The notes beneath the pieces are model-generated. The model saw nothing but the letters and a program-made list of their open reading frames with translations, was not told where the DNA came from and made no database searches. 64,000 nt of DNA from Magallana gigas (lineage: Eukaryota): NCBI RefSeq assembly GCF_963853765.1, contig NC_088856.1, positions 32,550,001 to 32,614,000 of the forward strand, written 5' to 3'. Position numbers and translations under genes: made by a program. Shown one piece after another: positions 29,601-49,500 of the stretch. The number at the start of each line of letters is the position of its first letter. Within the stretch, counting starts at the first letter, position 1.

Positions 29601-32600
29601 ACGAATTTTAAATTTAACACATCAATAAATGAATTAATCTTTGTAAAAATATAGGCTTTCATCCGTGCGACTCAGAGAATGGATGCATGATAACTTGAAA
29701 AATTTTCAGGGCTTTTTGAAAAATATTTAAAAATAAAACTCAAAATTGCGACCAAAGACCATACAACTCGATACACAACAAACACATTTAAAATCGATTT
29801 GTACTGCATATTATCTTCGAAAGCTTCCTGACACTTCACCGATGCCTACCTAAAATATCAATATGGCCTCACCGTGATCTGGCGGAATCAATTATTTTTT
29901 CATCAGGAACTGTACACATCGTGGGATTCGATGCAAATCTTACTGGTTCCATCGACCTGCTCAGTTAATGAATCTGACGTCAGGAGCATATCTTTGTGAC
30001 ATATTAATACTCATCAACATTTTTCTGTTCAAGTAAACAAACTTACTTTATTCGTATGACACGTGACAGGGGTTAAAATCGAAAATTTCTACACGTATCT
30101 ATAACAATAGATTGTTATAGATAATTTTGGAAATCTTCGATTTTAAACTTTTAATGTAACACTCGCCCTACTCCTTCCCTTTGAGATCTTCTTGCACACT
30201 AGTTTTTAGAGAGCTCCTGAGTGGTAGGAGCGATCTGCCATTTATACACATTATGTCATAATTTGTCATCAATTCACTTATCCGAACATTTTTAGATTAG
30301 ATCAAGATAAAGAATTCGAATAAAAAAAATTGCATGGGCATTTAGTAGCTTGTATGGATGTGTTTGAACAGAAACACATGACTGTGTATACTACATTTCT
30401 GGTATGATTTTCAACCAAAATATATATTGCAATATATTTTTTTCATGTTATATATTGGTGACTTTTTTTATTATTTCATGATAAAGTGTTGTTTCCAGCT
30501 TTGATTTTCGACATATTTTTCTAATTTTTTCCTTGTATTCACTTCTCATTTTTCATCTCTCATTTTTGCAGTGTATGCAAGAGAGGGGTCATTGATATAA
30601 GCCCTATGGCTTGTTTCCCAATTTCACAATTGTAATTACCGCCATGTTAATGTATTTGAATCTATAATGAATAAATATTGTTCAAACTAAAACATTTGGC
30701 GATGTAGTTGAATTAGCGAAATTTGAATTCCGCAAAAAAAAAAAATGAAAAAAATAAATCACAGCCAAATCTAATGCGTTTACACATTCAGTTATGTTTA
30801 TACATGTTTTAAGTGTTGATTTTTGTTTACCATAGGTGCCAACGAATACATTCAGACAGCCAGGAATGATAGGTAAGTCACATAATCAACGTAAAATCAG
30901 TAGATCTTTCCCTGAATCATATCAGCCTGTCCTGTGAATTTAAGATAATCGCATCATTAACTCGAAATGTGGCATTGGGGTTCATATTTCCTTTCCAAAC
31001 CTATATTATATCCCCAAAATAAATGATTTTTAAAGTTTACGTGAAATTCCACTGAAACATTCAAACTTAATTTTAACTCTCTCCCCCCCCCCCCCCCCAC
31101 AACAAAACACAAAATAAAAACTCATACCCACGTTGGGCAAGGAAGACTTTAATGAAAACAAACAGTTTTCAAAACCACTCGAATGCTGAAACACAAACCA
31201 GACAAGCTAAAATCAAGAACACTTTGAAAGACTCTAAAATAGTAATGTTCGGTGGTGAGCGAAGAACAAAATCATATAAATCGAAACTAGACGCTGCGCG
31301 AGTCTGAATATTCATTTATGCAAATATGTAAATATTAACGAATCTTATTCAGTTCTTGCGTAAGTGCAAACAAAACGTTTTGAATTTCTTGAGTTTCAAA
31401 ATTTTTTTGGGTTCTCGTATTCTAGCATAATTAATGGCGTACATTAAACAATATTAAATAATACGCATGACTTATAGTCTTAAACTACACTGTAAATATG
31501 ATGACTATTCTATTTTGTTTTTGGGTTTTTTTGTGTTGTTGTTTTTTGGGTTTTTTTTGGTTGTTTTTTTTTGTAAATTAAAAAAATAAATAAATTGTAC
31601 TTTGTCTGATATCATAAAACTTTAACTCTGTAAAAATATATAGATCTACATGTATAGTTTAGTCGTTCAAATCTGGCATCCCATTTAAATTAAAGATAAG
31701 TAACCCAATTAAAGTTGACTGTTTATACAGAGTTCTCTTTGTCTATCTCTGTTCTAAATACCCTGCGTTTATTTGTTTCAGAGGCTGTTTACACGGCCAA
31801 AGAACGGTGGATGGAAGCTGTGTGTGTTTGCCATGCTGGAGCGGCCATCAATGTGATGTTCCCAGTACGTGGTTTTATTTTCAAAGTAGAAATCTTTAAA
31901 GATACTCTTGCTATTCCGTGAAGCTATTCAATAAGACAACTATAAACAAACTTCACAGTATGTAAATGAATCTTGACAATCAAAAGACCACATTCAAAGC
32001 AATCTAATTTGAACTATTGGAAAATTTGTTGGTCTTATCATTATGGTTCTATTTTAGGAAATCGACATCCGCCCAAGTTTAGTCAAGATGTGTATTACAC
32101 TTCCGTCACGGATCTCATTAGCAGGGATAACATTCTTGTTCCCGAGGCTTTCGATGAAGACCTGAAGACAGTGTGCAAAGAGGATGCAACATGTCCCTGT
32201 GCCGAAGTCTATTTCTCTATTATGGACGGAAACGAAGATGGTTTGTTCACCATTGATCCCCAATCTGGAGCTCTATCGATCAGCTTTGGAGCCGTGCCAC
32301 AGAAAGATCGATATGAAATCACACTCAAAGCTTCAAATCAATTTAACAGCATCAATCAGCCTGAATCCACAACCCTTGTCATCGTAGATTTTCCTAAATA
32401 CCAAAGCGAGGTCGAGAGCCCACATCACATCGAGAAAAGGGTAAAATTCCAAAAAACCAGAAAGCTAACTTAACAACGCAATAACAAAAGACATTTTTGT
32501 TTATAATCACAGAAAACGAAATTCCGCAGGGAAATTGAAACATAAATAACTCATCAGATTAACGTTAAAGCCAAGATAAGACCATAATTGATAGTTTATC

Positions 32601-35600
32601 CACGTAATTATTACATTTTTAAGTACAACATTCAGATTCTTTGAAGTTTTACCAAACGCACTTATAAATCATCCATGTAGGCAATCTATTAGTGTTTGCA
32701 ATGTTTTGTTTAGGCTCTGTCAAGCGTTGTTGGAAACGTGACGTTTGACCTCAAGAAGAAGTACCCGTATAACGAGACGACAGAGATGAAGGTGGGCAGC
32801 CGCGTCCGGTTCCAGCTGACCATCACGTTCCCGATAGAGGACACAGACATGCTGGTGGAACTCTTCACTCCGGACAACGAAACCACCGTCATGATCTTGT
32901 GTGACGTCAACGTGACGGCCATCGGAAGCAGCCTCATGTACAACGGAAGTAAAGAACCAGTAATGGACTCCCGGGAACCCGACTCAGTAATGGTAAGATA
33001 ATCTTCCTATTTCGAAGTTTTCTTTTTTAAAACATCCCGCAGATGATAATGTCGTATAAATTTTTGGAACGTTAAAGATCAAGTTTAAATACGTAAAGAT
33101 CCTTGTAATTTAAGTACGACAGAGCGATTATCAACTTTGGTGTTGTCCAAAACTCCGGCTGTGTCAATGCGATAGAGTGCAGCATCTATATCGAGTACGA
33201 GGCAATCCTTTTGGAGAATCCTTCCACAAATGCCGGAGAGGTTTACTGGGTCAGTGCTGGAGCTGAGTACAATAATGAGAACGAGGTTTGGGTGGGACAA
33301 GCATCGTTTGTGGCTTTTCCAAATGACACCGTAAGTGTTGGGGATTTTAGAGTGCGCTTTCATCTCATTATTTCCAAAATGAAAACTTCTTTGAATAATG
33401 TACGTATAGAAGTATTTACGATATGGCGCGTTTACCGTCGGAATTTCTCACATTATATGTAAAAACGATTAACGATATTTTTCCAGACTGTTAACGAAAA
33501 CCCGACAGTTAATTTTACCGGACCTAGCACTTTATCCGTGGGATCAGCCGCCGTTTTCCAGGTTGACTTACTTCTGCCTAATCCTTCCTCGCTCCTGACT
33601 TTTGACGCCTTTGCTCCTATCAATACCTCTTCTGTCATGTCCATCTGTAGTGCCAAACTCAAGTACCTCTCAGACAATTTTAGATGTGGTTTTGATGAAA
33701 GAGCAGTGACTACACAATATTACCAGGATCAAACTGGCATTGGAAACTCTATGGGTCATCTTAATCTAGGAACTTTGCTAAATAAAGGTATGAATTCAAG
33801 AAAGTCAGACACATCGATGGTACCATGCATAGCATACAATTTTCAGGAATGTCTTTATCTTTCCTTGACTGTCTCTGTAGGATCACGAGATGTAACAAAC
33901 GTTCAAGAGAACAACCTGGTGTCCGTGGAGTTTGTAGCTCACCTGTACAACGACCCCAGTTTTGTCGGCACTAATTACATGGTTGGGGCCGCGTTCGAGA
34001 TTTCACCGAACCAAATATGGGCAGGACAAATGCAGGTCACTGCTACTTCTGAGGTGGATCCAATAGGCATGGTCAGTTTTTTTATTGTTGTACATTTTTG
34101 TATCCTATAATGTCTTTAAAACAACTGATCGACAATTGAGTATGATTATTGTTTCTGTTTGCTAGTAAGATACTATGATCACTATTTGTATTTTAAAACA
34201 GTCCACCCCGCTTTTGGAGTTCAACCCTCCCAACGGACAGACAGTTGCTATTGGAGACGCCGTGACGCTCCTGCTTGAAGTGCAAATTCCAGATTCTACT
34301 ACTACATCATACAGCCTACTAATTAAGGCACCGTTTTCCACAACTGCTATCTTTAAAGTGTGTTCAGTCGAGATCAAATCCATTGGTGAAAACATGCCTT
34401 GCGTTCACAAAGAGGACAAAAAGACGGTTTACTCCTCACGTGACACCGTGTCGTCGTCTCCTGAGCCTGACATGGCTACCCTCAACCTAGGTGGGATAAC
34501 CAATCTCAATCTGAACAATACTGCCACAGAAGCAGACACAATTTCCTTTGAAATTATCGTTGCGCCATTAAATCACACGGAGGTTGTGGATTTGTCCTCG
34601 CACACCGTGGAAGCCACGTTGTTTTACGCGGGATCGTTAACCGTAGTCCAGTCATCGTCCATTCAAATATCTGGTACTTCTGTGCAGACCACCAGTGTGT
34701 CGGTGAGTCCAAAACCTTAACAACGAACCTTATTCAACAATGTAGCCATGCTTCCTACAAGAGAAAGCATATTTGCTATGTTCGAATTTATTCACTTTCT
34801 GCAAGACTCTTGTTTCTTTTATTTAAGACACAACGTTAATTTTTTTCAGAACACAACCTCCCCGTCTTTTAACATGGTTTACGTGTTTGGAAATGAAAAT
34901 GTAGAGGTCGGTACTGCGACCCGCGCTCAGCTTGAGATCACCACCAACAGAAGTGTGTCCTATCCCATGATGAACATGGAGTTCATCATGCCTCTTGGCA
35001 ACACCTCCACCAAGCTGTCCATCTGTAGAGCCCGGATGTTGTCCGCCGGGAGAAACTTGCCCTGCGTGGCACCGGACTGGATCAACTCCCAGGTCATATA
35101 TCAGTCACAGTAAGTATAGATCACGGTACCGACCGGCTACTAAGATTGACCGTAGATTATGACGATATCAGCAGTTTTCCCCCGACTCTTTCATTGTTAG
35201 ATATTAAGACGAATATCCATGCACTGAGCTGTTCAGGCCGATATCTAATCCATACACAGCTAAAAAGTATATCTTACAATTGATAAATAATACAACCTGG
35301 ACCGGAAAAGAAATGTGCTTGGTTGTTCATTTGGACCTTAGCGGAATAGGCTAATATATCAACATATTCGAATGAGGTGTATATTTCTTTTCAATATAAA
35401 CATAATCTATGCTCTTAAGAAAAACGGGTTTTTAAATGATAGATACAACGAAACAGTCAATGACCAGGCCTTGATGTACCTAAGCACCGTCTGTAACTAC
35501 CAGCGAGTGGACAACGTCACTGATGACATCATTACCATCGTTCTGGATGTGAAGGTGGAGGATAACCCCGAGTTGATAACAGGAGAGAAAGAGTGGATCA

Positions 35601-38600
35601 GTGCCGGGAATCAGTACTCGGATACAAAGATATGGGTCGGACAGCTAGCTTTGTATGCCCAGAGAACAGGAACAATCATCCCGGTAAGACTGAATACCTG
35701 ATACATGATATAATCGATGATGCAAGAATTTGGGGGAAGAAACTGTTCTGAATGTATATCGAATTTTGCAAATTACTTCTAAATTTTGCTGGTGTTTTCA
35801 CGGACGAAAGCACTTCGGTTGTTTCTTAAAGTATATCGACCAAGGTGTAGTGTTTTGAATGAAAGACGAGGCTTGTTTTTTATTTTACCTTTTTTTAAAG
35901 GGAACGACCCCGTACATCAATCTCATCAAAAACACCACATTGAGTAGCATACCAATCGGTTACCCCTCCGTGTATACAGCTCTGATAAAGATCGCTCCAC
36001 AGGAGAGTGCCCAAGTCAAGGTTTCTGTGACGGTTAGCAGCTCTGTGTTGTCTATTTGCGGACTGCGTATAAAGGACATCGGCGACAACTACCCATGTGT
36101 CAATAAAAACGTTACCACGTCAATCAGCGGATCTTCTGGCTTCATTGACTTGGGTATCGTCACAAATACGGGTAAGGGAAAGAAGTATACATTTCCTTAA
36201 AAGCCCAAACATGTTATATGATCCCACTTAGTCTTTACAGGAAATTTGGAATTTTCAAACGGTCTGTCAACCAGAATTTTTTCCCGTAAGGCTGTAGTTT
36301 GAGCGTCTAGCATGCCTTAAATTCATTATCATACCTTATATAATTCCAGGACCCAATGCACTGGTTTCCAATGACTTCTACGACAGTAACACCATTTTAG
36401 TAGAGTTGATTCTTCAGCTAGCAGACGACACCACCACCGTAACTGATGGCTCCAGTCACAGCTTTGACGTAGACGTGGAATATGGAAGTGACGGAAGTAA
36501 AAAGAGTTTTTCCGCGCAGACGATTGTGGCCACTCATGACAAAACAGTGGCTAACTTTGTATGACTTTTTCTACTGGTTATTTTCAAAATAAGCTGGTAT
36601 CATTTCTATTCATGTGGCAAGAACTCATTTTCAAATAATTGATTTTTCAGACTTCGGTTGACAATAGAACGGTGAATTCTTTTTTTATCGAAAACATTGG
36701 AAGCAATGTCTCTGATGCAAACATAGCAAAGGGAGAGTCTAAACGATTTGTTCTCGAGATGATATATCCAGAAGGAGAGACAAAAGATATCACTGTTAAG
36801 TTTATGTCGTCCTCCATTACTTCACAACAAAACAACATGGATCTGTGTGGATCCGGACTGACCTATGTGGGAGAAAACTTCCCTTGTCTGGATAAAACTA
36901 AAATTACACCAGAGTACTCGAAGAGGTAAGAATGTGTTTCTTATTATAATTAAAGTACTCAGTAGAACTTGAACATTCTAGCCGACTAAATGGCGTTTCT
37001 CTCTGACTCTCTTAGGACCGGGTCCCTTCTGATGGATACGGCGTCATTACAGCTCGGGTTTGTTCGTTCTTCCGGGGTTAAGACTGGTGACAACGAAGCC
37101 AACAAAGTAAGAATAATAGATTATAAGTGAAATTTTCTTTGCATTTTGTAGTCACGGCTTAAATTTTAACACTCTTTAACTTCAAAACGAATAAAGCTCG
37201 GCTCATCTGACTTTGAACTGTTTTCTTTCAGCTCCGTTTGGAAGCGGTGGCTAGGCTTCTCCCCAGTTCAACACTGTCCGCGGGGACCGTGATTCCATTC
37301 CATGTGGCTGTCAATACAAACAACTTAGAGATATACGTGGGTCAGATTGATTTAACTGTGACCGACACGCCCACCACCACTACAGTGGTAAGGACAAATC
37401 ACCGTGATGGATATTATCGTGGAGATTTTTTCTTTATTCTTTTTTTTCTTCTTGGAAAATAATAAGTATTACATTGCAAACTTTTATTATTTTTCTTACA
37501 GACGACAAGCATTGTGAATACATCCTTATTGTACATCAACTCCAGCAGTGACCCTCACCCCGTGAATGTCGGTAACCTGACCACCCTTCCTATCGTCATG
37601 TACGTTCCTCCAAACACTATGTCCTCGGTCCTATTCGACATTGAGCTACCCCAGTTAACAGTCACCATAGGGACAATCGAGAACATCCGGGTTTCCTCCA
37701 GTGGAAGCAACATTGGTTGTGTCTACGAAAACGAGTCTCTGGCTTTGAAATTTGACAGGAAGTTCAATTCATCTATCAACACATGTCAGGTCCATCATGG
37801 GCAGTTGGATCTTGGAACTGTCACTAATACTGGTATGATGAAACAGCTGTTAATCATTTTGGCATTCGATCAGTGGGCTAAGGCAAGAAACATGTAGGAT
37901 TTGCTGTTGGTAAATTATTTCAAAATCTTTCCGTTTAGGGTTGTCTTATGGAACGGGTACAAACATAGAGGGTGATGACCACATTCTAATAGAAGTGGAT
38001 CTCAGAATAAATGACAACATACCTGACTCACTTGGTTCGGTATTTCCAATAAGTATCGGGGCAAAAGTTGCAGACTATATTGTTATATACGAGAAAAACA
38101 TTTCTCTAACAAGAACCGGGTATGAGAGGCCTGACCTAGAAATAATCGCTACTTACAACTCAACATTTTCAACTTCGTAAGTACGATAAAATACTGTGCA
38201 CTAGTATTCTACTGATCTAATATGAGAGTTTTTTTTCTGACAAATTTGTTGTTGCAATTGCAGATCCTTGATTGTTGTTGATGCCATCTTGAAACACAGT
38301 AATATGACGTCTGCGACTGCAATAAACGCGACGGCCTATTTTTATTTACCGCCATATTTGGAATACAAGAGTATTCAAAGTAACGTTACTCACAGTGGTC
38401 CAGTTTTTAGAGAGGGAGTCGTGGAAATCCAGGTAAATAAAGAAAAACAACCATTACTGACCTCCAAATGCCTGTGTTAACTAACTGTTGCAAAACTAAG
38501 AAAATGATATTTTCTTTCGTATAACAGTTTGACGAAGTTCTCATGTGTGACGTCATCAACATGCAGCTGACACTGGAACCGAATCAGACGACAACTGTGC

Positions 38601-41561
38601 CCCTCGACATCCTCACGGAAAACACAATGGTTGCATACGAGGTCAGTAGCTTTATGGCACACACTCCAGCCAGCGTCTACCCATCCGACCAGGTCTTTGA
38701 CACGCCCCTTCAATATCTGAACTTTAGTGTAACAGTCACCAAAGTAGGAGGTAAATATCGTACTCGTTGCAGGAAATATTCGCACATGAATAATTTAAAT
38801 TAAACGTTTGTTTGCACTTTGAATTATTGGCTTTAAAATGTTTCTGCAGTGAATATTTAATAAATTATAAAAGGTTGAATGCAGCTGAAACTGAATTGAT
38901 TGTGAATTTTGTACAACAGTGTGTGACCTACCGCTGGGTATGACCAGTGGACATATAGACGACTGTCAGCTAGACGGCTCCATAGAGAACGACCCGGCCC
39001 GACCCCCGTCACACGGCCGCTACAACGGCAACTCAGGTCAGTGCAAGGCTGTCCGCACGGTAACGTGTCTAAACACGTGTAGGATTTGTCGAGTTTCTCC
39101 TACCTATTAAAATGTATCAAAGTGTATATTTCCCATTTGTTTAAAATCTATAGCATGGAGACCATTCTCAAGAGGACCAACGTTTTCCAAATTCCGGTAT
39201 TTCCAAGTGTTCTTTGGCAACAAGACGTTGGTGAATAAGATTGTGATGCAGAAAGGCGCGGGGTACACCCACCACCCCTCCCAGCTGTCCCTCAGATACA
39301 GCAATGACGGCTACTCCTGGCAAACGGCGGAAACGGTATGACGTGATGGTGTCGCTCTTTGCTCGTCTATAAATTGAAAGAAATATATCATTTTTACAAA
39401 CATTTTCATTACATACATGTATCTACTTTAAACGCAAGCTGAAGAAAGTATTTTACCGCTTTTACGCCTCTAACTACGAATTACACAAAGGTTTCCTCAA
39501 TGCTGCATGAACAAACTGATACTTATAATAAACTTTCAGGCAACATTTTTCCGACGATTTCAGTACAAATTCAGTTGTTGATAAATATTTTTGACCAATG
39601 CACCTGCATATACTCAATCAAAATTGTCGAATAAGTGTTAAACATTCCCTAAATGACGTGAATCACGGATCGCCTGAGTTCGTCTTTTTGATGTCAAGTT
39701 TTACAATGAACTGTTGGTCTTTAAGGTGGCGGTGTCCACGCCGTTTGCGGAGACGACCATCTACCCTCAGAGGCAGACCCAGGCCCGCTTCATGAGGGTC
39801 TATATCGACAAGGACGACACTATTAACGGAGAGCCGCCAGACATAGGACTCAAGTTCGAATTCTTTGGCTGCTATCTCAGCGGAGAATACACTACAACTA
39901 GTAAGGAACAATGCACTGCGCGATAAATTGGCTTTCTTACCCTTTTGATTGCTTTAGTTGTAATTAAGTCGATGGTGAAGGCGGGACTGCATGTCAGGCA
40001 TTTAATTAACATCCCAGAGAGAAAATGATGATGATTTGACGAAATGGAACAATAGCATAATTAATTTTTGGTTGGCTTAATAACCAATTCCATTATAATA
40101 AAATGTTGATTAAAATTTGTGTATTTGTATTGATCCCATAGCGACCTTTATAGCTTATATGCGGTACTTTATTAACAACTTTATTTGGTTTCTGGACGTT
40201 TTTTTTTTCGATGTGGTCATATTTAGGATGAATGGTTTAACAAACAGATCGTGTTAGTTGTTTATAAAAGTATATTTAAACCTTACACGTATTGTTTTCT
40301 TTCAGGTGTATGCAATGCAGCGCCGAGTAATATATACCCTAACGGTCAGTAGTTCGAATCTCAAATATTGCATTAAAAAAATTCTTTGAAACGTAAAAAG
40401 AAATTTAAGTTAATGTAGTTTAAATATATATTGTATTAACAGACAATTCCTTGGTTTGCAGATTTCTATTTCCGTAGTTTCCATGCTCTGAATGGAAAAG
40501 TTCTGATGTGCGATATTAATCCTAAAGACAAGTGAGTAACAGCAGATGTTCGCCGCGTCTCTTCTCGCGGTGTCCAAATTTTTACGCTTCCATATGACTT
40601 AGAGTTAAACAAAGAACTCTGTTTTCTTCTATGTACGCACATGTCATCAAGTTATAATAGTGGTATACATGTAATTAGAAGTAACGCGTTAAAGATTTGG
40701 TTTTTAATTAAAACTGATAATTTGATGGTCTGTTCTGTTTTTCAAGGGACTTAAAACAACACTGCCATTTCTCTGTAGACGGCGCTACTTGGACAGGTAA
40801 ATACAAGTTTGTTTTATGGTACAGTTGACTCTGTTCAGTTTTTGAGGACAGTTTTAATAACATCGATTGATCATGTTGAACTTTAACCTTTTAAAGCAAT
40901 GGATGGTCGCGTTGCCAGTCTTCTTGGACACGAGTCATCAAAAAATATATTCTTTGCTTACGACAACGACCAGAGGTCTACCTTAATGAGTGAGGACGAA
41001 GGAATCACGTGGTATAATGTACCACGTGATTTCTACTTGGACACACGATCTAAGTTAACATTTACCCCGTCTAAAAACGTCCCAATGCAAGTGACCAACC
41101 TGAATGTAGCGGAGCCCCATGCCAACTATCAATTTGGACCGTGGGGAGGTTTGTCTTTAACTCAATTAACTCACAGAGTTTGAATGAAATAATTTTAATG
41201 GTAAAATAGATTACTTGTAATTATATGTGTTTTAATTTGATACCAGTACCATTTTCTACGGCTTATGACTCCTATAAAATTAATAAAGAAATTCATCCTA
41301 TTTAATGAAGTATATTCTAAGTATGTTAAGCAGTCCAAAATTTGCGCAATTTTTTTTTTGCGCAGCAAAGTTTATTTGGTAGCAATGGACAGTAACTCTA
41401 TGACAGTTCTGCAGCTCTTTAGTTTACTCAGGTGACTGTTAAGGCCCATATAACTCCTTTTAGTTTATTTTTCCTTTTTTTATACAGTTACGTTTGAGGG
41501 TTTATGGAAGAGTTCAGCAGGCATATGGAGTAGAGTGGTTGAATGGGACACGTGTTGCTGA
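23286..41561 (+). CDS. Uncharacterised large secreted protein (~1,830 aa): signal peptide, EGF-like, cadherin-like, 7 tandem ~165-aa repeats, Ig-like module, F5/8 type C (discoidin), Asp-box tail
   Basis: Phase-consistent exons: 23286-23355 (MARGLPNISLCFCVTSFFILLSK), 30372-30401 (less certain), 30836-30872, 31782-31864 (GCLHGQRTVDGSCVCLPCWSGHQCDVP), 32058-32440 (PPKFSQDVY...AFDED...YFSIMDGNEDGLFTIDPQSG), 32714-32992, 33115-33330, 33487-33787, 33881-34071, 34202-34702, 34850-35109, 35443-35683, 35901-36171, 36350-36558, 36651-36925, 37016-37106, 37232-37387, 37502-37832, 37939-38176, 38264-38432, 38528-38750, 38920-39036, 39154-39335, 39726-39900 (CDLPLGM...AWRP...YSNDGYSW...GLKFEFFGC), 40306-40344, 40462-40531, 40747-40796, 40897-41148 and 41488-41561. 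Total 5514 nt, stop-free, ending EWDTCC*. The link from the first exon to the rest is inferred. Confidence 0.8.
23618..23653. repeat. (ATC)n microsatellite
   Basis: About 12 ATC units in intron 1 of the secreted-protein gene. Confidence 0.85.
24132..24198. repeat. Minisatellite, 16-bp unit, ~4 copies
   Basis: gtcttaatgagggtat repeated. Confidence 0.85.
27029..27127. repeat. 12-bp minisatellite (cgcaccacagaa-like), ~8 copies
   Basis: Units CGCACCAAACAA, CGCACCACAGAA, AGCACCACACAG, CGCACAACATGA and similar. Confidence 0.8.
28196..28855. mobile_element. Probable non-autonomous Helentron/HINE-like element (right boundary approximate)
   Basis: It starts ttttagctaacctgag...caagtgagctt followed by a short (GTT)n/ACGT-type microsatellite. 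This layout is typical of molluscan Helentron-derived elements. Assignment is by resemblance only. Confidence 0.4.
29291..29506. mobile_element. Degenerate MITE
   Basis: actggccgaaatctcg and cgagatttcgatcagt are imperfect inverted termini. Confidence 0.45.
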
Positions 41562-42894
41562 TAGCAGAGGGTCGATACATAGAACCACTGGACCCCGCAC
41601 CCACTCAGTGACGCTACAACCCCTATAAAACCTTTGTTACAAACTTTGTTCGTTGTGACTTGTCAGTTTTTTGGTATTTTAAAGAATTGATTCACATGTG
41701 TGTTTCATCTCAATCTGCCCTTTATTTGATTTACATATTGCTGAGTATCAATGATATTCAGCGCCAGATCCCAGTAGACAACAGTCAAGTGATGTCAACA
41801 GCGTGCTTAATCAGTGCCGACAGAGATTACATATATATCAGTTTATACTTTGAAAAATAAATTCCGTCCATATCGTTACAGTTGCTGATCTATTTATATT
41901 TATTTATATGTATCCCTATATTCATACTAGTGTATAACAAAGGTTGAAAACGCCGCCTGCTTCGTTAACGCTGGAATTGTTAATGTTTCATTTCATGTCA
42001 TACCGTTATTATTTTTTGTTTATATATGTAAAACATTCAATGTTTTAAATGTGTGTTGTTTTTATTGCTACTGTCAGATTGACGGTTTGTTTCCAATGTA
42101 TACTGGGAATCTGTTATGAACTTTATCCTCCCGAACAATGTTTAAATGCGAGGCAGTACAAGGGTTAATCAAACAGTTTAAAACCTAATTCAAAAGAAAT
42201 GAAAAGTTGAAGACAGTTTTTCCACAAATTTTAACATCGCCTACATTGATATCGATGCTCAACCGTAAATGGTATTCTCCAGAAACTACATTGTATTCCT
42301 AACATTATTAAGAAAGTTTTCAAAATGGAGACCAAGCAAGAAGTAAACAGGAGAGATCCAGCTACATGTCTTTTGAGAAAGGATTATGTTACCACAATCT
42401 GATCAAAGTGAAGCAGCTAACATTGTGTATTTTTACGACATAGTATATTTTAAAAGCAATATCCGACGTGTTTCAAAGCTAGCTGATTTTGAACTTGTTT
42501 TTTTCGTTCTCTGAATCTTTTGCTTAAATATTACGCATTCAGTCAAAAAAAAAACAAAAAACGAAGAAAACAATCAAATACAAGCGTCGTACCCTTATCA
42601 CGTTTTGTTTGAGAGCAAGTTAAAAGCGTCCCGGAAATGTCAACATTTTTCAGATTCTGATGACGTCGGCATTAACTGTTAATACCTATTTTGCAGATAC
42701 ATTGCTTACCCCCAATACCTTAATTAAATTGTCGGGACTGAGCTTTGATTAATCCTTACAGAAAAAAATCTATTTGTTGGACTTTTAGACGTCAGCCTTC
42801 CTAAACCTTACAACTTCTGGTCTGCTCTTGACCTAATGTATTCAACAGCGCAATGAATTCCTCATATATACAAAACATAGTAAAGAAGGTTAAT

Positions 42895-43235
42895 GAAACA
42901 TATTAAACAACAGTAGTTGTATTGAACCATATTAAACCGCAATAGGTATACTTATTGTACCATATTTGACCACAATAGTTATATTGAACATATTAAACTA
43001 CAATAGTTATACCTATTGCACCAAATTAAACCTCAATAATTATATTGAACCATATTAAACCGCAATAGTAAAAACCACAATAGTTATACCTCTTGTATCA
43101 TATCAAACCGCAATAGCTAAATTGCACCATATTAATCCGCAGTTATATTGAATCATATTAAACTGCAATAGATATATTGAAACGTGTTAAACCACAATAG
43201 TTATACCTATTTACCATGTTTAACCACAATAGTTT
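42895..43235. repeat. Degenerate minisatellite, ~28-33-bp unit
   Basis: Recurrent attgaaccatattaaacc(g/a)caatagttat(acct). Confidence 0.75.
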
Positions 43236-43313
43236 TACTTTACTATCACTAACCGCAAATCCTTCTCAGTAACAGTACTATAAATCTTGTAACCATAAAC
43301 AAAGCCAAAAAAC

Positions 43314-44597
43314 AGTAATACTCTAGTCAGTGACTGCAAAAGCCCAGTCAGTAACGGCAATACTCTAGTCAGTGACTGCAATAACCCAGTTAGTAATTGC
43401 AATACTCTAGTCAGTTACTGAAATAACCAAGTCATTGACTGCAATACTCTAGTCAGTGACTGCAATAACCCAGTCAGGAACGGCAATACTCTAGTCAGTT
43501 ACTGCAATATCCCAGTCAGGAACGGCATTACTGTAGTCAGTGACTGCAATTACCCAGTCAGGAACGGCAATACTCTAGTCAGTTACTGCAATAACCCAGT
43601 CAGGAACGGCAATACTCTAGTCAGTTACTGCAATAACCCAGTCAGGAACGGCATTACTGTAGTCAGTGACTGCAATTACCCAGTCAGGAACGGCAATAGT
43701 CTAGTCAGTGACTGCAATTACTCGGTCAGCAACGTCATTACTCAGTCAGTAACTGCAAAATCCAAGTCAGTAACGGCAATAGTCTAGTCAGTGACTGCAA
43801 TAACCCAGTCAGTGACTGCAATACTCTAGTCAGTGACTGCAGTAACTCAGTCAGTGACTGCAATACTCTAGTCAGAGACTGCAATAACCCAGTCAGGAAT
43901 GTCATTACTCAGTCAGTAACTGCAATAACCCAGTCAGTAACGGCAATACTCTAGTCAGTGACTGCAATAACCCAGTCAGGAACGGCAATACTCTAGTCAG
44001 TGACTGCAATAACCCAGTCAGGAACGGCATTACTGTAGTCAGTGACTGCAATTACTCAGTCAGGAACGGCAATAGTCTAGTCAGTGACTGCAATTACTCG
44101 GTCAGGAACGTCATTACTCAGTCAGTTACTGCAAAAAACCAGTCAGTAACTGCAATACTCTAGTCAGTGACTGCAATAACTCAGTCAGTAATGGCACTGC
44201 TCTAGTCAGTGACTGGAATAACCCAGTCAGGAACGGCATTACTCAGTCAGTAACTGTAAAAACCAAGTCAGTAACTGCAATACTCTAGTCAGTGGCTGCA
44301 ATAACCCAGTCAGGAACGGCAATACTCCAGTCAGTGACTGCAATAACCCAGTCAGTAACAGCAATACTCTAGTCAGTGACTGCAATCACCCAGTCAGTGA
44401 CTGCAATACTCTAGTCAGTAACTGCAATAACCCATTCAGTAATGGCAATACACTAGTCAGTGTCTGGAATAACCCAGTCAGGAATGGCAATACTCTAGAC
44501 AGTAACTGCAATAACCCATTCAGTAACTGCATACTCAGTAACTGCAATAACCAAGTCAGTAACTGCAATACTTAGTCAGTAACTGCAATAACCAGAA
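43314..44597. repeat. ~1.3-kb satellite array: 42-bp unit built from two 21-bp subunits
   Basis: aatactctagtcagtgactgc alternates with aataacccagtcaggaacggc, with occasional 20-bp variants. Confidence 0.92.
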
Positions 44598-46531
44598 ACA
44601 GCAATTCCATGGCCAATAAACTCTAAGACGCTGGCCACTAACATCATTCCCGGCCAGTTACCACAATACAGTAGTCAGTAACTTCTATAACCTACAGCAA
44701 GTTATCACAATGATTAAGTCTGTAATCGCTGATAATTCATATAAAATAAATAATAGATAAGTACAAGTCTAGGGGTAAAAGTATACTTTATTCCATCAAA
44801 ATATTGGATTGCTATATAAATGGAATGTCTTTCTTCTCTCGCCTATGAAATAAATATACACTGTTTGTTTATAAAATATGTTGTTTGCTGTGATGCTGCA
44901 GAATGAAACATTCACTCACTCTTTCAATACAAAAAACATCAGGTTTCCATGCAAATAGTACAAAAAGCATAACATACACTGAATAAATTGTCTTTGGTGC
45001 TAGATTAAACAAAAGAAAAAAATCTTCGTAATTGCCATTTGATACATTGAAGCTCAATATTTCCTAAAACAAGAACAAATATACATACTTCCACTGAATT
45101 ACACTAGAATCACCAGTTCTTTAAATTACATATTATGAAATCTCTTTTTTTTCCATTTCAAAACCATGTCTTGTTTTTTTTCTATAAAAAAAGACATACA
45201 CCTCTAAAAAAGTAATTTTTTCAAATATATTTAAAATGCCATCAAGATTTTACTTCCTGACATTTATGTGCTGTATAAAAATACTTTGTACTATAAAAAT
45301 GTGACATTCAATACCACAAATTCAGTGTGAAACATAAACTCTGAATATAATCATGCTCTATTTGTAGAGGAAAATTGCTGTAGTATAAAAACACAAACTT
45401 TTCAACAAAATGGAACTCTATTCTAAAAAAATAAAAAGTAGCAATGACTTCTCCAGGTTTCCTGTAAATATGGCATTTTGAATTGATAATATTTCATTGT
45501 GGTTGTAAAACAAAACAAGTCCTTAACATTCATGGTTCCAAGCAGTCACTATAAATAATATTCCACTCTTTATCTAGCTTGTACTCAAAATGCCAATGAT
45601 TTAATGTAAAGTGTAATTATTATTAAACAATGAATTATACATTTATATACTTATGTATAACAACTACCTAAAGGTTCAAATGAAACAGCAACATTTAAGT
45701 AACAACTAAACTGTCATGGTTAAAAATCTTTTCAGCACTGCATGTGGGGTTTTATCATCATAACAACATACTCATTGCAAACAAAAGTTGGTCTTGATTC
45801 ATAGTCCAATCCCTAAATTAAAGCTAACAATGGCACAAGAACAAGAAAGCTAGGATTTTCTCTTCATATAATTATATTTCAACCATTGGACGGCTACACA
45901 TCATGAAGAGTCATTTAATTGCATAGGGCATCAGCACTTGCAGTAATCTGGTGCTCCAGCCATCTAGCTCACCAAAATGGCAGACAATTTGCTGTAATAT
46001 CACTGAAATTTTGCATATGCTCATTTAAACTGGTGGCATCGCTGAAAGTACCTCTAGCAAAATTAACCCTAAAGCTGGTGACCTAGTCAAAGTAAGTGTA
46101 AACTGGTGACTCAACAAACCATCAATAACTGCACTAAACAAAATTAATATAAAATCAGAAGATGCCTTTTAATGGATTTTTTCTTCATACAAAAAAATAC
46201 AAGTCGAATACCAAAAAATCATATGGCAAGATATTCTAATCTCTATCAAAATGTCCTTAATTTGACTTTTAAGAATCTCTAATCAACCACAAAAGTGCAA
46301 CGTAAAATTCCATTAAACGTTTCTTATCACACAACAACTAAGAAATAAAGTTAATATAAAATCCATAAACGCCATTTGTTACTTTGCCAATTCTACCCAC
46401 CAATTTCTGAATCCAAGTGATTTCAAATACTAGTGTAACAAGTTGTAGAACAATGACAGACTGCACTTGGAGAATCGAATACTTTGTGGGGAGAGAGAGG
46501 GAGAGGAGGAGGGGAGGGGAGAGGAGGAGGG

Positions 46532-49500
46532 TCAAAGATCTGTCTGTAAGGGACTGGCTAGGGGTGCCTTTTCATCGTCGTCCTCTAGGTTACCATAGTG
46601 ATAATCGGTACATTTGTCGACGTTGACATAAGTACTTTGTATATTGGACCTATGCTGGCCCTGTTTCATCTTGTGCTCCAACACAGACAACATCTCCATG
46701 ATGGTCTTCACCAGGTCACTGAACTGTGGCCTGTCCGTGGGGTTAAACTCCCAGCAGTTCCTCATCACTGTATACCTGTAGATGTCATATCACATTACAG
46801 ACCATTACAACTTCTATCATTACATCATATAATCTCAGCATTCTGTGGCCAAAAGGTGTGTTCATTAATATTTGCCCCCCGGGGCTTGTATGACAAAACT
46901 GTTACACTGAAAAATTCATTACAGGGTGTGCAATTCATTGGAGTCAGGGGTCAGAAAATAGATATACTTACAGCGGGTCTGGACAGAATGGTGGCTGGGG
47001 CATCCGTCTGTTCTTTTTGATGTACCTTAGGACGTCCCAGTTGTCGACCTCTGGGTAAGGATTGACTCCCCGGGTCATCAGTTCCCACAGCACCACCCCA
47101 AAGGACCACTGGAAATAGACCTCAGCATCACTACACCGACCACTCAGTCACTCTGAGGTTTGTCCTATATCTTATTGCTAGGCGATATCTAAAATCAGCT
47201 ACCACTAGAACTAAGTTAAACGAACTCTGTGTTAAATGTTAATGTTTATATACCTGAACCTATTACCGGTATATCAGTTCTGAAGTAAGCATTGTATTCA
47301 AGGTTATTGTTTGACTTGTATAAGAAAGGTTTCATCGTCTCGCAAAAAGCTGTTTTCACCTTTCCAATCCTAAATCTGGTTTGGGTAAAATCAAATACTA
47401 GATTTTTACCATAACGTCACATTGTCACAAGAAACATACCTCATAGTTTGCTGAATCCGACAACAATACAGTAATGGTGTGGGAGGAGCCCATTATATAG
47501 CATTTTTGAGTAAGTTTTCTCGTTATGTCACAAATGAGATAATTTTATTACTATGTCCTGAAAATTGCTGAATCACATCGGAAATAGTTATATTGCCCTC
47601 CTGGGAAAAGTTATATTTCACAGGAAATGGTTATATTGCCCTCCCGAAACTGATATATCACCCTCGCGTGCAATCATTCTGCATATTTATTACGTCGGGT
47701 TTGAAATTTAGCTTGGCAAATAAACAGTTCCTCGAAAATAAAAATGTCTTGACAGTGTCTGCTATTCACAGAAACTTACTTTAGTTGTTTAATTTGAATA
47801 AAAATGTTCTTTTTGAAAGCTCCGATCGACATTTTACAGGAAAATGAATTTGTAAGATATGAAGATGCATTGATAATTAAAATACACATGTTAATGAGAT
47901 AAATATATTCTTAAACATATTTTTATTTTTAAAAATGTTATATAACATATATTACATGTCATCTCGGGCGACAATACCAGAATATTTGTCCCTTGGTGAC
48001 AGGAAAGCCCTGGAGTGTTATGTCCCCCTCTGCCTTCGGCATCCGGCAACATAAACTCCAGGGCTTTCCTGTCACCTCGTGGCAAATATTATACATATAT
48101 TACATGGCTTCGAGGGCGACATACCAGAATATTTGCCCCGAGGTGACAGGAAAGCCCTGGAGTGTTATGTCACCCGATGCCGAAGGCAGAGGGGGACAAA
48201 ACACTCCAGGGCTTTCCTGTCACCGATGGACAAATATTCTGGTATTGTCGCCTGAGAAGACATGTAATATGTTATATAACATTTTTAAACAAATCAAACT
48301 CGGGTTATCAACATATTTATTTAATTCACAAGGCAGAGGCAAATGTTTTTAGAAGGCTCACGCTTGAGTTTATCACTTTCGTCGTATTTGCCAAATTTTT
48401 TTCATCAGTTAAACTATCGAGTTTGAACAAACCACAGACATTGGCCTGACATGTTTAAAATTCGCGGATCTGTTTTGCTTAGCAACTGGCTCGTTGAATT
48501 TCGAACCCGACGTAATCAATATGCAGAACTCTTGCATGCGATGGTGATATTACAATTTCGGGAGGGCAATATAACTATTTCCTGTGAAATAAAACTGTTG
48601 CCAAGGAGGGCAATATAACTGTTTCCGGTGTGATTCAGCAATTTTTAGGGCATAGTAATAAAATTATCTCATTTGTGACATAACAAGAAAACTTGTTCAA
48701 AAATGGTATATACTGGTATGTCGCCCTCGAAGCCATGTAATATATGTATAATGTTATCTAGTACACAGTGTTCCTGGCAGACCTTCCATACTCACCACAT
48801 CTGACTTGGAGCTGTAGGTTCCCTTCTCCAGACTCTCTGGAGCCATCCATTTCACAGGGAGCTTACTCTTCTTGTTGTCACTGCTGTAGTAATCTCGCTC
48901 ATAAATGTCTCGAGATAGACCAAAATCGGCCACAATGGCTCGGTAGTTCTCATTCAGCCTGAAAAAGACCCCAGAAGATGCATGTACTCATTTCTTGTCA
49001 AATGACTTTAAGCTAAGTTTTATAAGTACATTTGAACACTGGATAATATACTTACATGCAGTTTCTGCAGGCTAAGTCTCTGTGAACCACCTTCAGCAGA
49101 GATAGGTATTCCATTCCCTTGGCAATGTCGACGGCAAACAAGATGAGGTCCTTAATTGTGGGATTCTAAATATCAAATGCACAGTACTGCATTATCCAAA
49201 AGCTATCCAAAAGCTACTTTCACAGTTTCTTTGTAATCATATTGTCAATTAACTAACTGTACATAAAGCAGCAAATCATTTTAAATCCTATTGGATTCTC
49301 ATTTCTAAATCATATACAATACACAGATCTAAAATTATCTTTCTCTCTTATATATTTCAAAGATACACTAATTATGGTAACATTTAGCACCATCTTTCTC
49401 ATCAGCTGATTAGTGTTACCATTTAAGGTAAAGGTCCATACCCCACTTGATAAATAAAATGCGTACAGATTTTTTTCATATTTTTCAAACATGTATATGA

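What the first reader, a model, noticed from the sequence alone, without database searches (positions are those of the whole stretch)
32714..38176. Seven tandem ~165-aa repeats of an unrecognised Cys-containing beta-type domain in a giant secreted protein
The core of the ~1,830-aa protein is seven divergent repeats: 32714-33330, 33487-34071, 34202-34702, 34850-35683, 35901-36558, 36651-37387 and 37502-~38150. They share the pattern V/IG-x3-F/L-x-L-x-I-x-x-P ... (I/L)C-x6-8-G-x-N-x-PC ... L-x-LG-x-(I/V)-x-N ... I-x-(V/I)E ... V-x-AG ... IW-x-GQ, and are dense in N-x-S/T sequons. I recognise no standard animal domain here. From memory, motifs such as KGESKRFVLEMIYPEGET and INFGVVQN...IYIEYEAILLEN...NAG resemble DUF11/fimbrial isopeptide-type Ig-like repeats of bacterial giant adhesins. 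That resemblance is inference. If it is real, this is an intron-rich animal gene built from bacterial-adhesin-like modules and placed between cadherin and discoidin adhesion domains. It would be a candidate uncharacterised extracellular matrix, adhesion or microbe-binding scaffold.
Basis: partly seen in the sequence, partly recalled or inferred. Interest (0 to 1): 0.78.

Follow-up and report, generated by a model that had tools for sequence, protein, structure and literature searches.

The report
Animal protein built from pilin-like domains
A spliced, expressed animal gene encodes a secreted protein whose core is seven copies of a beta-sandwich domain that is demonstrably related to the stalk domains of bacterial pili and giant adhesins, but has swapped the bacterial isopeptide cross-link for a cysteine pair; the family is conserved across invertebrate phyla and has never been characterised.

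Summary
An HMM built only from orthologues finds exactly seven ~160-aa repeats (E 1e-27 to 1e-41 each). No repeat passes any Pfam or NCBIfam cut-off.

The gene belongs to an unnamed family of 1,500-1,900-aa secreted proteins in molluscs, annelids, nemerteans, flatworms, ticks, a millipede, echinoderms and hemichordates. The layout is signal peptide, EGF, cadherin-like, seven repeats, a DUF11-like domain, discoidin and a C-terminal domain.

- The animal HMM hits ~155-aa segments of giant bacterial "isopeptide-forming fimbrial" proteins at 40-64 bits per domain.
- A bacteria-only HMM finds all seven window repeats.
- hhalign gives 98.9% probability.
- Those bacterial segments match TIGR04226 (RrgB D2 isopeptide domain).
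- An AlphaFold model (pLDDT 94.7) matches Gram-positive pilin middle domains (Z about 12) and prokaryotic DUF11/pilin models (TM 0.72-0.75).

The repeats are not DUF11 proper. They lack the Lys/Asp/Asn triad (hydrophobic residues instead) and carry a conserved Cys pair. The likely role, which is inferred, is a rigid glycosylated stalk between terminal binding domains.

The parts
31786..31860 (+). EGF-like exon (approximate limits, inside open segment 31663-31896)
   Evidence: Weak Pfam EGF_Teneurin match, E 0.0021. tblastn of the Patella and Owenia orthologues aligns their N-terminal EGF here. The exon ends were not mapped by RNA.
32027..32440 (+). Cadherin-like domain exon (3' end fixed by RNA; 5' end approximate)
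   Evidence: Pfam Cadherin 27.4 bits against a cut-off of 28.8, E 4.6e-6. The same position passes the cut-off in the Macrostomum orthologue at 31 bits. The donor at 32440|32441 is seen in RNA contigs.
32714..33330 (+). Repeat 1 (exons 32714-32992, 33115-33330)
   Evidence: Junctions. Orthologue-only HMM 124 bits, E 2.8e-40. Has the first Cys only.
33487..34071 (+). Repeat 2 (exons 33487-33787, 33881-34071; the 93-nt intron between them is open in frame)
   Evidence: Junctions. 127 bits, E 3.2e-41. Cys pair present.
34202..34702 (+). Repeat 3 (single exon; the unit that was modelled)
   Evidence: Junctions. 115 bits, E 2.1e-37. AlphaFold2 with the family alignment gives pLDDT 94.7, pTM 0.87. 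Bacteria-only HMM 44.7 bits. Cys54 and Cys67 of the unit.
34850..35683 (+). Repeat 4 (exons 34850-35109, 35443-35683)
   Evidence: Junctions. 125 bits, E 1.8e-40.
35901..36558 (+). Repeat 5 (exons 35901-36171, 36350-36558)
   Evidence: Junctions. 87.5 bits, E 5e-29.
36651..37387 (+). Repeat 6 (exons 36651-36925, 37016-37106, 37232-37387)
   Evidence: Junctions. 113 bits, E 7.1e-37.
37502..38176 (+). Repeat 7 (exons 37502-37832, 37939-38176)
   Evidence: Junctions, three of them also in raw polyA reads. 83 bits, E 1.1e-27. First Cys replaced by Glu.
38264..38750 (+). Eighth, different beta domain, DUF11/CLIPPER-like (exon 38264-38432; inferred intron 38433-38527; exon 38528 to about 38750)
   Evidence: The acceptor at 38264 is from RNA. 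The CAG|GTAAAT donor at 38433 and the acceptor at 38527 are inferred from sequence. An alignment of this region from 14 orthologues against canonical bacterial DUF11 domains gives hhalign Prob 89.5%, E 2e-6 over 83 columns. No Pfam hit.
38920..39923 (+). F5/8 type C (discoidin) domain, about three exons (limits approximate)
   Evidence: Pfam F5_F8_type_C, E 3.6e-5 on the partial exon 39111-39338. Orthologues pass the cut-off at 38-60 bits. tblastn of orthologues covers 38922-39338 and 39741-39893.
40887..41180 (+). Exon of the conserved C-terminal domain (one Asp-box-like S-x-D-x-G-x-x-W motif)
   Evidence: tblastn of the bivalve orthologues' C-terminal 90 aa, 33-36% identity. Only chance-level Sortilin-Vps10 and BNR matches.

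Best explanation
The gene encodes a secreted, glycosylated extracellular protein of an ancient, uncharacterised invertebrate family. Its layout is signal peptide, EGF, cadherin-like, seven repeats, a DUF11-like domain, discoidin and a C-terminal domain.

Each ~160-aa repeat is one CnaA-type (Ig-like, about 10-stranded) beta-sandwich. It is homologous to the 'D2' isopeptide domain of sortase pilins and of giant bacterial fibrillar adhesins (TIGR04226-type, DUF11 superfamily).

In the animal family the three residues of the bacterial Lys-Asn isopeptide bond and its catalytic acid have become hydrophobic core residues. A conserved Cys pair, about 13 residues apart and most likely a disulfide, has appeared instead.

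By analogy with the bacterial proteins, the seven domains plus the eighth DUF11-like one form a stiff, protease-resistant stalk tens of nanometres long. The stalk would space an N-terminal EGF/cadherin head from a C-terminal discoidin (glycan- or lipid-binding) module in matrix, cell-cell or cell-microbe adhesion.

Shown: the gene structure, transcription, repeat number, homology, fold, loss of the triad and family distribution. Inferred: the disulfide, the stalk role, and the adhesion or matrix function.
For: Gene and transcript: 15 GT..AG junctions in RNA contigs of three studies, with an open spliced frame.

Seven repeats.

Family: 403 representative clusters at E<1e-3, the top ~30 being 1,500-1,900-aa proteins with seven repeats. 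They are named only 'uncharacterized' in Sinanodonta, Pecten, Dreissena, Patella, Lymnaea, Nucella, Owenia, Lineus, Macrostomum, ticks, a millipede, Strongylocentrotus, Diadema, crinoids, Ptychodera and Glandiceps.

Secretion: signal peptides and no membrane helix in orthologues.

Age of the array: the window's repeat i matches the orthologue's repeat i best in 7/7 (bivalve, annelid), 6/7 (tick, flatworm) and 4/7 (hemichordate) cases.

Homology to bacterial domains:
- Animal-only HMM scores 40-64 bits per domain over HMM positions 13-160 in ten giant bacterial proteins.
- Bacteria-only HMM scores 130 bits on the window protein, with all seven repeats in register, and up to 59.8 bits for one domain of Ptychodera.
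- hhalign Prob 98.9%, E 3.6e-17.
- The bacterial segments match TIGR04226 end to end (35 bits against a cut-off of 30 for P0096). The proteins are named isopeptide-forming fimbrial proteins.

Fold:
- pLDDT 94.7.
- VIA Z 11.5-12.2 to BcpA, EbpB, RrgB, CppA, GBS80 and LrpA, and Z 10.9, rmsd 2.6 A to the CLIPPER domain 9ifr.
- ESM Atlas TM 0.72-0.75 over 144-153 residues to DUF11/pilin proteins.
- Language-model features give DUF11 clusters at 0.95.

Triad and Cys pair:
- Lys column: bacteria K 88%, animals L/F/I/V.
- Acid column: bacteria D 97%, animals V/L/F/I.
- Asn column: bacteria N 88%, animals V/I/L/F.
- Cys columns: animals 75% and 76% Cys, where bacteria have V/L/I or variable residues.
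Against: - No experiment or tissue information bears on function. The stalk role is an analogy.
Two of the seven window repeats lack one Cys.
- No animal repeat reaches a curated family threshold, so the link to TIGR04226 runs through bacterial intermediates.
- Sequon enrichment is modest.
- The N-terminal signal-peptide exon and the last exon of this gene were not located in the window.
Confidence: 0.72

Rival explanations
1. The repeats are not a passive stalk. They are the working part: an array of seven divergent binding modules, for example a multivalent pattern-recognition or matrix-binding surface for microbial or glycan ligands. Each position would be specialised.
For: The repeats are only 16-25% identical to each other, yet each position is conserved across phyla. 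This suggests position-specific constraints beyond mere spacing. Related CnaA/DEv-IgG domains in MSCRAMMs (SdrD, ClfA, FnBPA; Z 9.3-10.5) and cohesins (Z 10-11) do bind ligands. The genome holds at least five paralogous arrays, as immune or adhesion families often do.
Against: The closest bacterial relatives are stalk-type domains alternating with DUF11 in giant adhesins. The conserved residues are mostly core Gly, Pro, Asn, Cys and hydrophobics, and no conserved surface patch was identified. Dedicated binding domains (EGF, cadherin-like, discoidin) sit at the ends.
Confidence: 0.2
2. The likeness to bacterial pilin or adhesin domains is convergence, or the generic similarity of Ig-like sandwiches. 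On this view the repeat is an animal invention with no specific bacterial kin.
For: The first profile, built from N-terminal halves only, also summed many weak hits on ordinary Ig_3 arrays to E 1e-16. This shows that generic strand patterns can accumulate. Foldseek TM to solved structures is only 0.5-0.59. Integrin calf and TMEM132 domains also appear at TM about 0.5.
Against: Full-length HMMs do not hit the Ig arrays at all, but they hit the bacterial D2-like segments reciprocally at up to 64 bits for a single domain, collinear over about 150 positions. hhalign gives 98.9%. Six motif blocks are shared in the same order. A second, different bacterial stalk domain type (DUF11-like) follows repeat 7.
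Confidence: 0.05
3. The locus is bacterial contamination, a recent transfer or a dead gene, and not a working animal gene.
For: The nearest non-family relatives are bacterial. A 2025 survey judged eukaryotic hits for isopeptide domains to be contamination (PMC12617251).
Against: There are fifteen spliceosomal introns, all spliced in RNA of several studies, and strand-specific polyA reads. The frame is open. The locus sits between ordinary animal genes on a 58-Mb contig. Collinear orthologues exist in at least seven phyla.
Confidence: 0.01

Closest known systems
TIGR04226 (RrgB_K2N_iso_D2) domains: the isopeptide 'D2'/middle CnaA-type domains of sortase pilins (RrgB, BcpA, GBS80, EbpB/C, SpaD) and of giant Gram-negative 'isopeptide-forming fimbrial proteins'
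   Same: - Same fold (Z 11.5-12.2).
- Sequence homology through the Gram-negative giant proteins: 40-64 bits per domain and hhalign 98.9%.
- Same order of motif blocks: IGE.VTY/G..f.l, PEG/P, SiGanl/svG.N, FdFGtV.N/ldLG.vtN, IVvEV/i.ve.
- Tandem use in very long secreted proteins.
   Different: - No Lys, Asn or catalytic acid, so no isopeptide bond.
- A Cys pair is present instead.
- It occurs in spliced animal genes, without a sortase or CTERM anchor.
- It is combined with EGF, cadherin-like and discoidin domains.
- Animal units do not reach the model's cut-off.
Pfam DUF11 (PF01345), renamed CLIPPER; crystal structure 9ifr (PMC12617251)
   Same: - CnaA-like Ig-type sandwich (Z 10.9, rmsd 2.6 A over 118 residues to 9ifr).
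- Atlas and AFDB neighbours are mostly DUF11 proteins.
- It is a stalk domain of fibrillar adhesins.
- Some DUF11 domains also lack the isopeptide residues, according to the paper.
- The domain after repeat 7 looks like canonical DUF11 (Prob 89.5%).
   Different: - The seven repeats are about 45 residues longer.
- They do not match the Pfam model.
- They give only Prob 1.6% against canonical DUF11 domains in hhalign.
- DUF11 has so far been reported only from bacteria and archaea.
Animal Ig-like stalk domains: integrin alpha thigh/calf, TMEM132 middle domains, complement C3/C5 MG domains
   Same: All are extracellular beta-sandwiches used as spacers in large animal surface or secreted proteins. 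They are weak fold neighbours (TM 0.47-0.54; Z 9.2-10.1).
   Different: They are clearly more distant than the prokaryotic domains, show no sequence-level signal, and have different lengths and motifs.

Membership tests
Pfam DUF11 / CLIPPER (PF01345) | Match to the family HMM at or above the gathering score (24.6 bits) | tested here: not met
   No hit at E<=1 on any window repeat exon. 0 of 71 family units match DUF11 at E<=1. hhalign of the unit alignment against 70 canonical DUF11 domains gives Prob 1.6%, E 0.03.
Pfam DUF11 / CLIPPER (PF01345) | CnaA-like Ig-type Greek-key beta-sandwich | tested here: met
   Model pLDDT 94.7. Z 10.9, rmsd 2.6 A to 9ifr and Z about 12 to pilin CnaA-type middle domains. 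TM 0.72-0.75 to DUF11 proteins in the Atlas.
Pfam DUF11 / CLIPPER (PF01345) | Lys (first strand), Asp and Asn (penultimate strand) isopeptide triad. The triad is typical of the family but not universal. | tested here: not met
   In 103 animal units the aligned columns are L/F/I/V, V/L/F/I and V/I/L/F. No column exceeds 25% Lys. The seven window repeats have L F T M L I T at the Lys column and V V V I F F I at the Asn column.
NCBIfam TIGR04226 RrgB_K2N_iso_D2 (isopeptide-forming fimbrial D2 domain) | HMM score of 30 bits or more | tested here: not met
   The window repeat and two orthologue units give no hit. 1 of 71 units hits, at E 0.0016. The bacterial segments that the animal HMM hits do match it: 35, 29.2, 25.8, 22.2 and 15.9 bits, full model length.
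NCBIfam TIGR04226 RrgB_K2N_iso_D2 (isopeptide-forming fimbrial D2 domain) | Homology detectable by profile methods | tested here: met
   Reciprocal HMM searches and hhalign Prob 98.9%, E 3.6e-17 over 127 columns link the animal units to the bacterial TIGR04226-type segments.
Unnamed bilaterian family (EGF, cadherin-like, seven repeats, discoidin; 'F5/8 type C domain-containing protein' in UniProt) | Seven repeats in register and a collinear full-length alignment to orthologues | tested here: met
   Seven domains. 40% identity over 1,220 aa to Pecten, 39% over 1,276 aa to Sinanodonta, and 26-28% over about 1,400 aa to the annelid, nemertean and flatworm proteins. Repeat-by-repeat best matches lie on the diagonal.
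Cadherin (PF00028), for the upstream flank | HMM score of 28.8 bits or more | tested here: inconclusive
   The window exon scores 27.4 bits, E 4.6e-6. Macrostomum scores 31 bits, the urchin 18 and Dreissena 14 at the same position.
F5/8 type C discoidin (PF00754), for the downstream flank | HMM score of 28.2 bits or more | tested here: met
   A single partial window exon scores 24.3 bits. The whole domain in orthologues scores 38-60 bits, and tblastn places it at 38922-39893.

The most novel reading that the evidence does not exclude
A block of bacterial fibrillar-adhesin stalk, made of D2-type isopeptide domains together with a DUF11/CLIPPER-type domain, was captured by an early animal before the protostome-deuterostome split. 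It acquired introns, was fused to EGF, cadherin and discoidin modules, and was re-engineered for the oxidising animal secretory pathway by trading the autocatalytic isopeptide bond for a disulfide. This would be the first genuine eukaryotic family of CnaA-like pilin domains. A 2025 global survey found this class only in bacteria and archaea. It would be an ancient inter-domain transfer that became a fixed, seven-domain extracellular scaffold in many phyla.
Probability: 0.35. Interest if true: 0.82.

Novelty: new variant of a known kind. Interest (0 to 1): 0.66.

Why it matters
CnaA-like isopeptide and stalk domains (pilins, MSCRAMMs, DUF11/CLIPPER) are regarded as a prokaryotic invention. The most recent survey dismissed eukaryotic hits as contamination (PMC12617251). 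Here a bona fide animal gene family, with introns, transcripts and collinear orthologues in at least seven phyla, is built from such domains.

- It gives a natural experiment in how a fold stabilised by an isopeptide bond is re-stabilised: by hydrophobic core residues plus a Cys pair.
- It defines a domain family missing from Pfam, which now annotates about 1,100 residues of otherwise blank sequence in hundreds of invertebrate proteins.
- It points to an unstudied secreted adhesion or matrix scaffold that seems absent from the standard model organisms. No vertebrate, insect or nematode member was seen among the named hits.
- It offers a testable case of ancient bacterium-to-animal domain transfer.

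Tried and rejected
- Single-sequence AlphaFold of repeat 3 gave pLDDT 45 and was unusable. Only the 71-row family alignment gave a confident model.
- MAFFT on exon fragments misplaced the C-terminal halves. I therefore searched with N-terminal halves first (A2) and rebuilt full units from orthologues.
- The A2 profile also pulled Ig_3/I-set arrays (P0061, P0062) to E 1e-16 by summing 3-10-bit hits. Full-length HMMs do not hit them, so I reject them as spurious.
- The word-indexed protein search with the Ptychodera repeat region found only one close relative. It was no use for mapping distribution.
- A profile search of PDB sequences found nothing below E 0.1.
- Paper searches for six orthologue accessions, and for metazoan CnaA-like domains, found nothing.
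- UniProt calls two Macrostomum fragments 'REJ domain-containing'. Pfam REJ does not match them.
- The earlier-findings index had nothing near this place.
- A brute-force enumeration of GT/AG pairs was uninformative and was superseded by the RNA junctions.
- I did not attempt a donor or rooted phylogeny. About 150 very divergent columns would not support one.
- I did not measure the Cys-Cys distance because model coordinates are not exposed.

Full report
WHAT IS THERE

The window is animal DNA (about 35% GC, rising to 41% over 32-40 kb). It carries a dense chain of short open segments on the + strand.

I laid contigs of three RNA runs from three different studies, plus raw reads of a polyA library, on 32400-38390. 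This gave fifteen joints, every one GT..AG. They define these exons:
- ..32440
- 32714-32992, 33115-33330
- 33487-33787, 33881-34071
- 34202-34702
- 34850-35109, 35443-35683
- 35901-36171, 36350-36558
- 36651-36925, 37016-37106, 37232-37387
- 37502-37832, 37939-38176
- 38264-..

Spliced in this way, the frame stays open for 1,415 codons. In the raw-read run the first mates lie on the minus strand, as expected for a + strand mRNA in a standard stranded library.

ARE THE REPEATS REAL?

I searched a profile of the seven N-terminal halves (A2) against 1.84 billion representative proteins. It found 403 clusters at E<1e-3. The top ~30 are proteins of 1,500-1,900 aa, nearly all with exactly seven hits spaced about 165 aa apart.

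From 15 of these orthologues I cut 103 full units and built an HMM that contains no window sequence. On the spliced window protein it finds seven domains, each covering almost the whole model, with independent E-values between 1e-27 and 1e-41.

Within the window the repeats are 16-25% identical to each other.

N-glycosylation sequons are somewhat enriched: 30 against 20.0 +/- 3.8 in shuffles.

THE FAMILY

Names attached to 20 clusters are all 'uncharacterized', 'hypothetical' or, automatically, 'F5/8 type C / EGF-like domain-containing protein'. They come from:
- bivalves (Sinanodonta, Pecten, Dreissena)
- gastropods (Patella, Lymnaea, Nucella)
- an annelid (Owenia)
- a nemertean (Lineus)
- a flatworm (Macrostomum)
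- ticks and a millipede
- sea urchins and crinoids
- hemichordates (Ptychodera, Glandiceps)

Further fold-level family members appear in AlphaFold DB clusters at TM 0.65-0.79, including an 1,805-aa F5/8 type C protein.

The window protein aligns collinearly with Pecten (40% over 1,220 aa) and Sinanodonta (39% over 1,276 aa). It still aligns at 26-28% over about 1,400 aa with the annelid, nemertean and flatworm proteins.

The window's repeat i finds its best partner in the orthologue's repeat i in 7/7 cases for the bivalve and the annelid, 6/7 for the tick and the flatworm, and 4/7 for the hemichordate. Chance would give about 1/7. So the seven-fold array is old and fixed, not a recent expansion.

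Orthologues start with signal peptides and have no membrane helix.

Flanking domains:
- an EGF (weak Pfam hits)
- one cadherin-like domain (27.4 bits in the window against a cut-off of 28.8; 31 bits in Macrostomum)
- a discoidin F5/8 type C domain
- a conserved C-terminal domain of about 190 aa with one Asp-box-like motif

No paper mentions the accessions tried.

WHAT IS THE REPEAT?

Curated libraries are blank. No Pfam hit falls on any window exon. None of the 71 units scanned passes a Pfam or NCBIfam cut-off. The best chance-level hits are TIGR04226 (E 0.0016), DUF7507 (0.0018) and GramPos_pilinBB (0.037), each in a single member. The PDB sequence search is also blank.

Several independent lines nevertheless converge on one answer.

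(a) Language-model features of repeat 3 point to DUF11 clusters (score 0.95, 184 of 256 shared features).

(b) With the 71-row family alignment, AlphaFold2 gives a confident single-domain model: pLDDT 94.7, pTM 0.87, about ten strands.

(c) An exhaustive structural scan of PDB representatives ranks the CnaA-type middle domains of Gram-positive major pilins first. BcpA, EbpB, RrgB, CppA, GBS80, LrpA and SSA1632 score Z 11.5-12.2. Cohesins, the CLIPPER (DUF11) domain 9ifr (Z 10.9, rmsd 2.6 A over 118 residues), MSCRAMM and AgI/II domains follow. Foldseek against PDB agrees, at TM 0.5-0.59. In the ESM Atlas the nearest models are prokaryotic DUF11, GramPos_pilinBB and 'isopeptide-forming fimbrial' proteins, at TM 0.72-0.75 over 144-153 residues and rmsd 2.7-3.0 A. 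Among reviewed UniProt entries the best animal neighbours are only TMEM132 (TM 0.52-0.54) and integrin alpha calf/thigh (about 0.5).

(d) Sequence homology:
- The full-length animal-only HMM hits ~155-aa segments of ten giant (2,300-6,200 aa) bacterial proteins at 40-64 bits per single domain, over HMM positions about 13-160.
- In these proteins the segments alternate with canonical DUF11 domains, with a period of about 310 aa.
- An HMM built only from 33 such bacterial segments finds all seven window repeats in register (130 bits in total, best single repeat 44.7 bits). It scores up to 59.8 bits on one Ptychodera repeat.
- Profile-profile comparison gives Prob 98.9%, E 3.6e-17 over 127 columns.
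- The bacterial segments match NCBIfam TIGR04226, the RrgB Lys-to-Asn isopeptide D2 domain, along its full length. Scores are 35 bits (above the 30-bit cut-off) for the Lampropedia protein, and 29, 26, 22 and 16 bits for others.
- NCBI names these proteins 'isopeptide-forming domain-containing fimbrial protein'.

A control. The first, half-length profile had also summed many 3-10-bit hits on ordinary Ig_3 arrays to E 1e-16. Neither full-length HMM hits those proteins, so I discard them.

The seven repeats are not canonical DUF11: hhalign gives Prob 1.6%. But the region between repeat 7 and the discoidin domain (38264 to about 38750) does resemble canonical DUF11, at Prob 89.5%, E 2e-6 over 83 columns. 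The animal protein thus carries both of the domain types that alternate in the bacterial stalks.

THE ISOPEPTIDE QUESTION

I made a joint alignment of 33 bacterial and 103 animal units. The bacterial segments conserve:
- Lys (88%) in the first strand (P.l.K.V)
- Asp (97%) in vltD.LP
- Glu (64%) in IVvEV
- Asn (88%) in LtNtAtL

This is the arrangement described for CnaA-like isopeptide domains: Lys in the first strand, Asn in the penultimate strand, plus a catalytic acid (PMC12617251).

The animal units have L/F/I/V at the Lys column, V/L/F/I at the Asp column and V/I/L/F at the Asn column. Glu survives in 34% of units. No animal column exceeds 25% Lys.

The seven window repeats read L F T M L I T at the Lys column and V V V I F F I at the Asn column.

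Conversely, the animal units have Cys at 75% and 76% of two columns about 13 residues apart (iC.v.v.svG.N.PC). Bacteria have V/L/I or variable residues there. In the model these are Cys54, in a strand, and Cys67, in the following loop. In the window the pair is complete in repeats 2-6.

The animal domains therefore cannot make the bacterial cross-link. They most probably use a disulfide instead. That is an inference, because I could not read model coordinates.

HOW IT PROBABLY WORKS

Shown:
- It is a secreted multi-domain protein.
- Its central ~1,150 residues are seven tandem pilin-D2-like sandwiches followed by a DUF11-like one.
- Recognised binding modules sit at both ends.

Inferred, by analogy with fibrillar adhesins, where such tandem domains form the stalk (PMC12617251):
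- The repeat block is a stiff, glycosylated, protease-resistant rod.
- The rod separates and presents the EGF/cadherin head and the discoidin/C-terminal tail in extracellular matrix, cell-cell or cell-microbe adhesion.

The main rival is that the repeats are themselves position-specialised binding modules. I keep it at about 0.2, because each position is separately conserved across phyla and because related DEv-IgG and cohesin domains do bind ligands.

Convergence is unlikely given the reciprocal single-domain scores. Contamination, recent transfer or pseudogene status is excluded by the introns, transcripts and orthologues.

ORIGIN

The nearest relatives outside the family are bacterial. The bacterial state (triad present) looks ancestral, and two bacterial stalk domain types sit together in the animal protein. 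This fits an ancient capture of an adhesin stalk by an early animal. I have not shown it: I made no rooted tree and did not survey non-bilaterians or protists. No vertebrate, insect or nematode member appeared among the clusters that carry names, but I could name only 30 of the 150 listed.

NOVELTY

The fold class and its bacterial families are well known. An authentic animal family of this class, lacking the isopeptide bond and carrying a Cys pair, is not in Pfam or NCBIfam and not in the literature I could search. The 2025 survey reports such domains only in bacteria and archaea, and treats eukaryotic hits as probable contamination. I rate it a new variant of a known kind, with interest 0.66.

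Noticed in passing
Own genome outside the window: L001 (C4:32687001-32697000, minus strand, about 80 kb downstream), L002 (C4:7479001-7489000, minus), L003 and L004 (C9:27.76 and 27.80 Mb, minus), L005 (C3:30.09 Mb, plus): At least five further loci carry arrays of the same repeat. L001 has nine exon-level hits of up to 62.6 bits, covering at least five repeats. So the domain family is multigene in this species. Whether the paralogues keep the seven-repeat plus discoidin layout was not examined.
   Followed up: partly
window 33788-33880: This 93-nt GT..AG intron inside repeat 2 has no stop in frame. A six-frame reading therefore shows a false 31-aa insertion (it contains the string VPCIAYNFQECL). 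All three RNA assemblies splice it out.
   Followed up: yes
window 43317-44593: A tandem array with a 42-bp unit (21-bp sub-period), about 31 copies, 85% matches. It gives long artefactual open frames rich in N, V, S and C just downstream of the gene. Smaller 29/61/77-bp arrays lie at 42887-43258.
   Followed up: partly
window 46341-60451, minus strand: A multi-exon receptor tyrosine kinase gene converges on the repeat gene. Kinase exons lie at 48757-48987 and 51500-51724 (PK_Tyr_Ser-Thr, E 2e-15 and 3e-11). There is a transmembrane-like exon near 52230-52592 and a 421-aa open N-terminal exon at 59189-60451 with no Pfam hit.
   Followed up: partly
window 2295-8451 and 10866-15134, plus strand: The upstream neighbours are ordinary animal genes. 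One is a WD40 beta-propeller gene. The other is a glycosyl hydrolase family 47 (ER mannosidase/EDEM-like) gene, with exons at 12296-12547 and 14039-14293 (E 6e-10 and 1.4e-14).
   Followed up: partly
window 40887-41180 and orthologue C-termini: The roughly 190 residues after the discoidin domain are conserved across phyla. They include an S-x-D-x-G-x-x-W Asp-box-like motif and often end in W..CC. They match no family above chance. This domain was not folded.
   Followed up: no
window 32897-38144: The RNA contigs of different studies differ from the window at about 37 single-base positions. They have no indels and no frame disruption, so this looks like ordinary allelic polymorphism.
   Followed up: no
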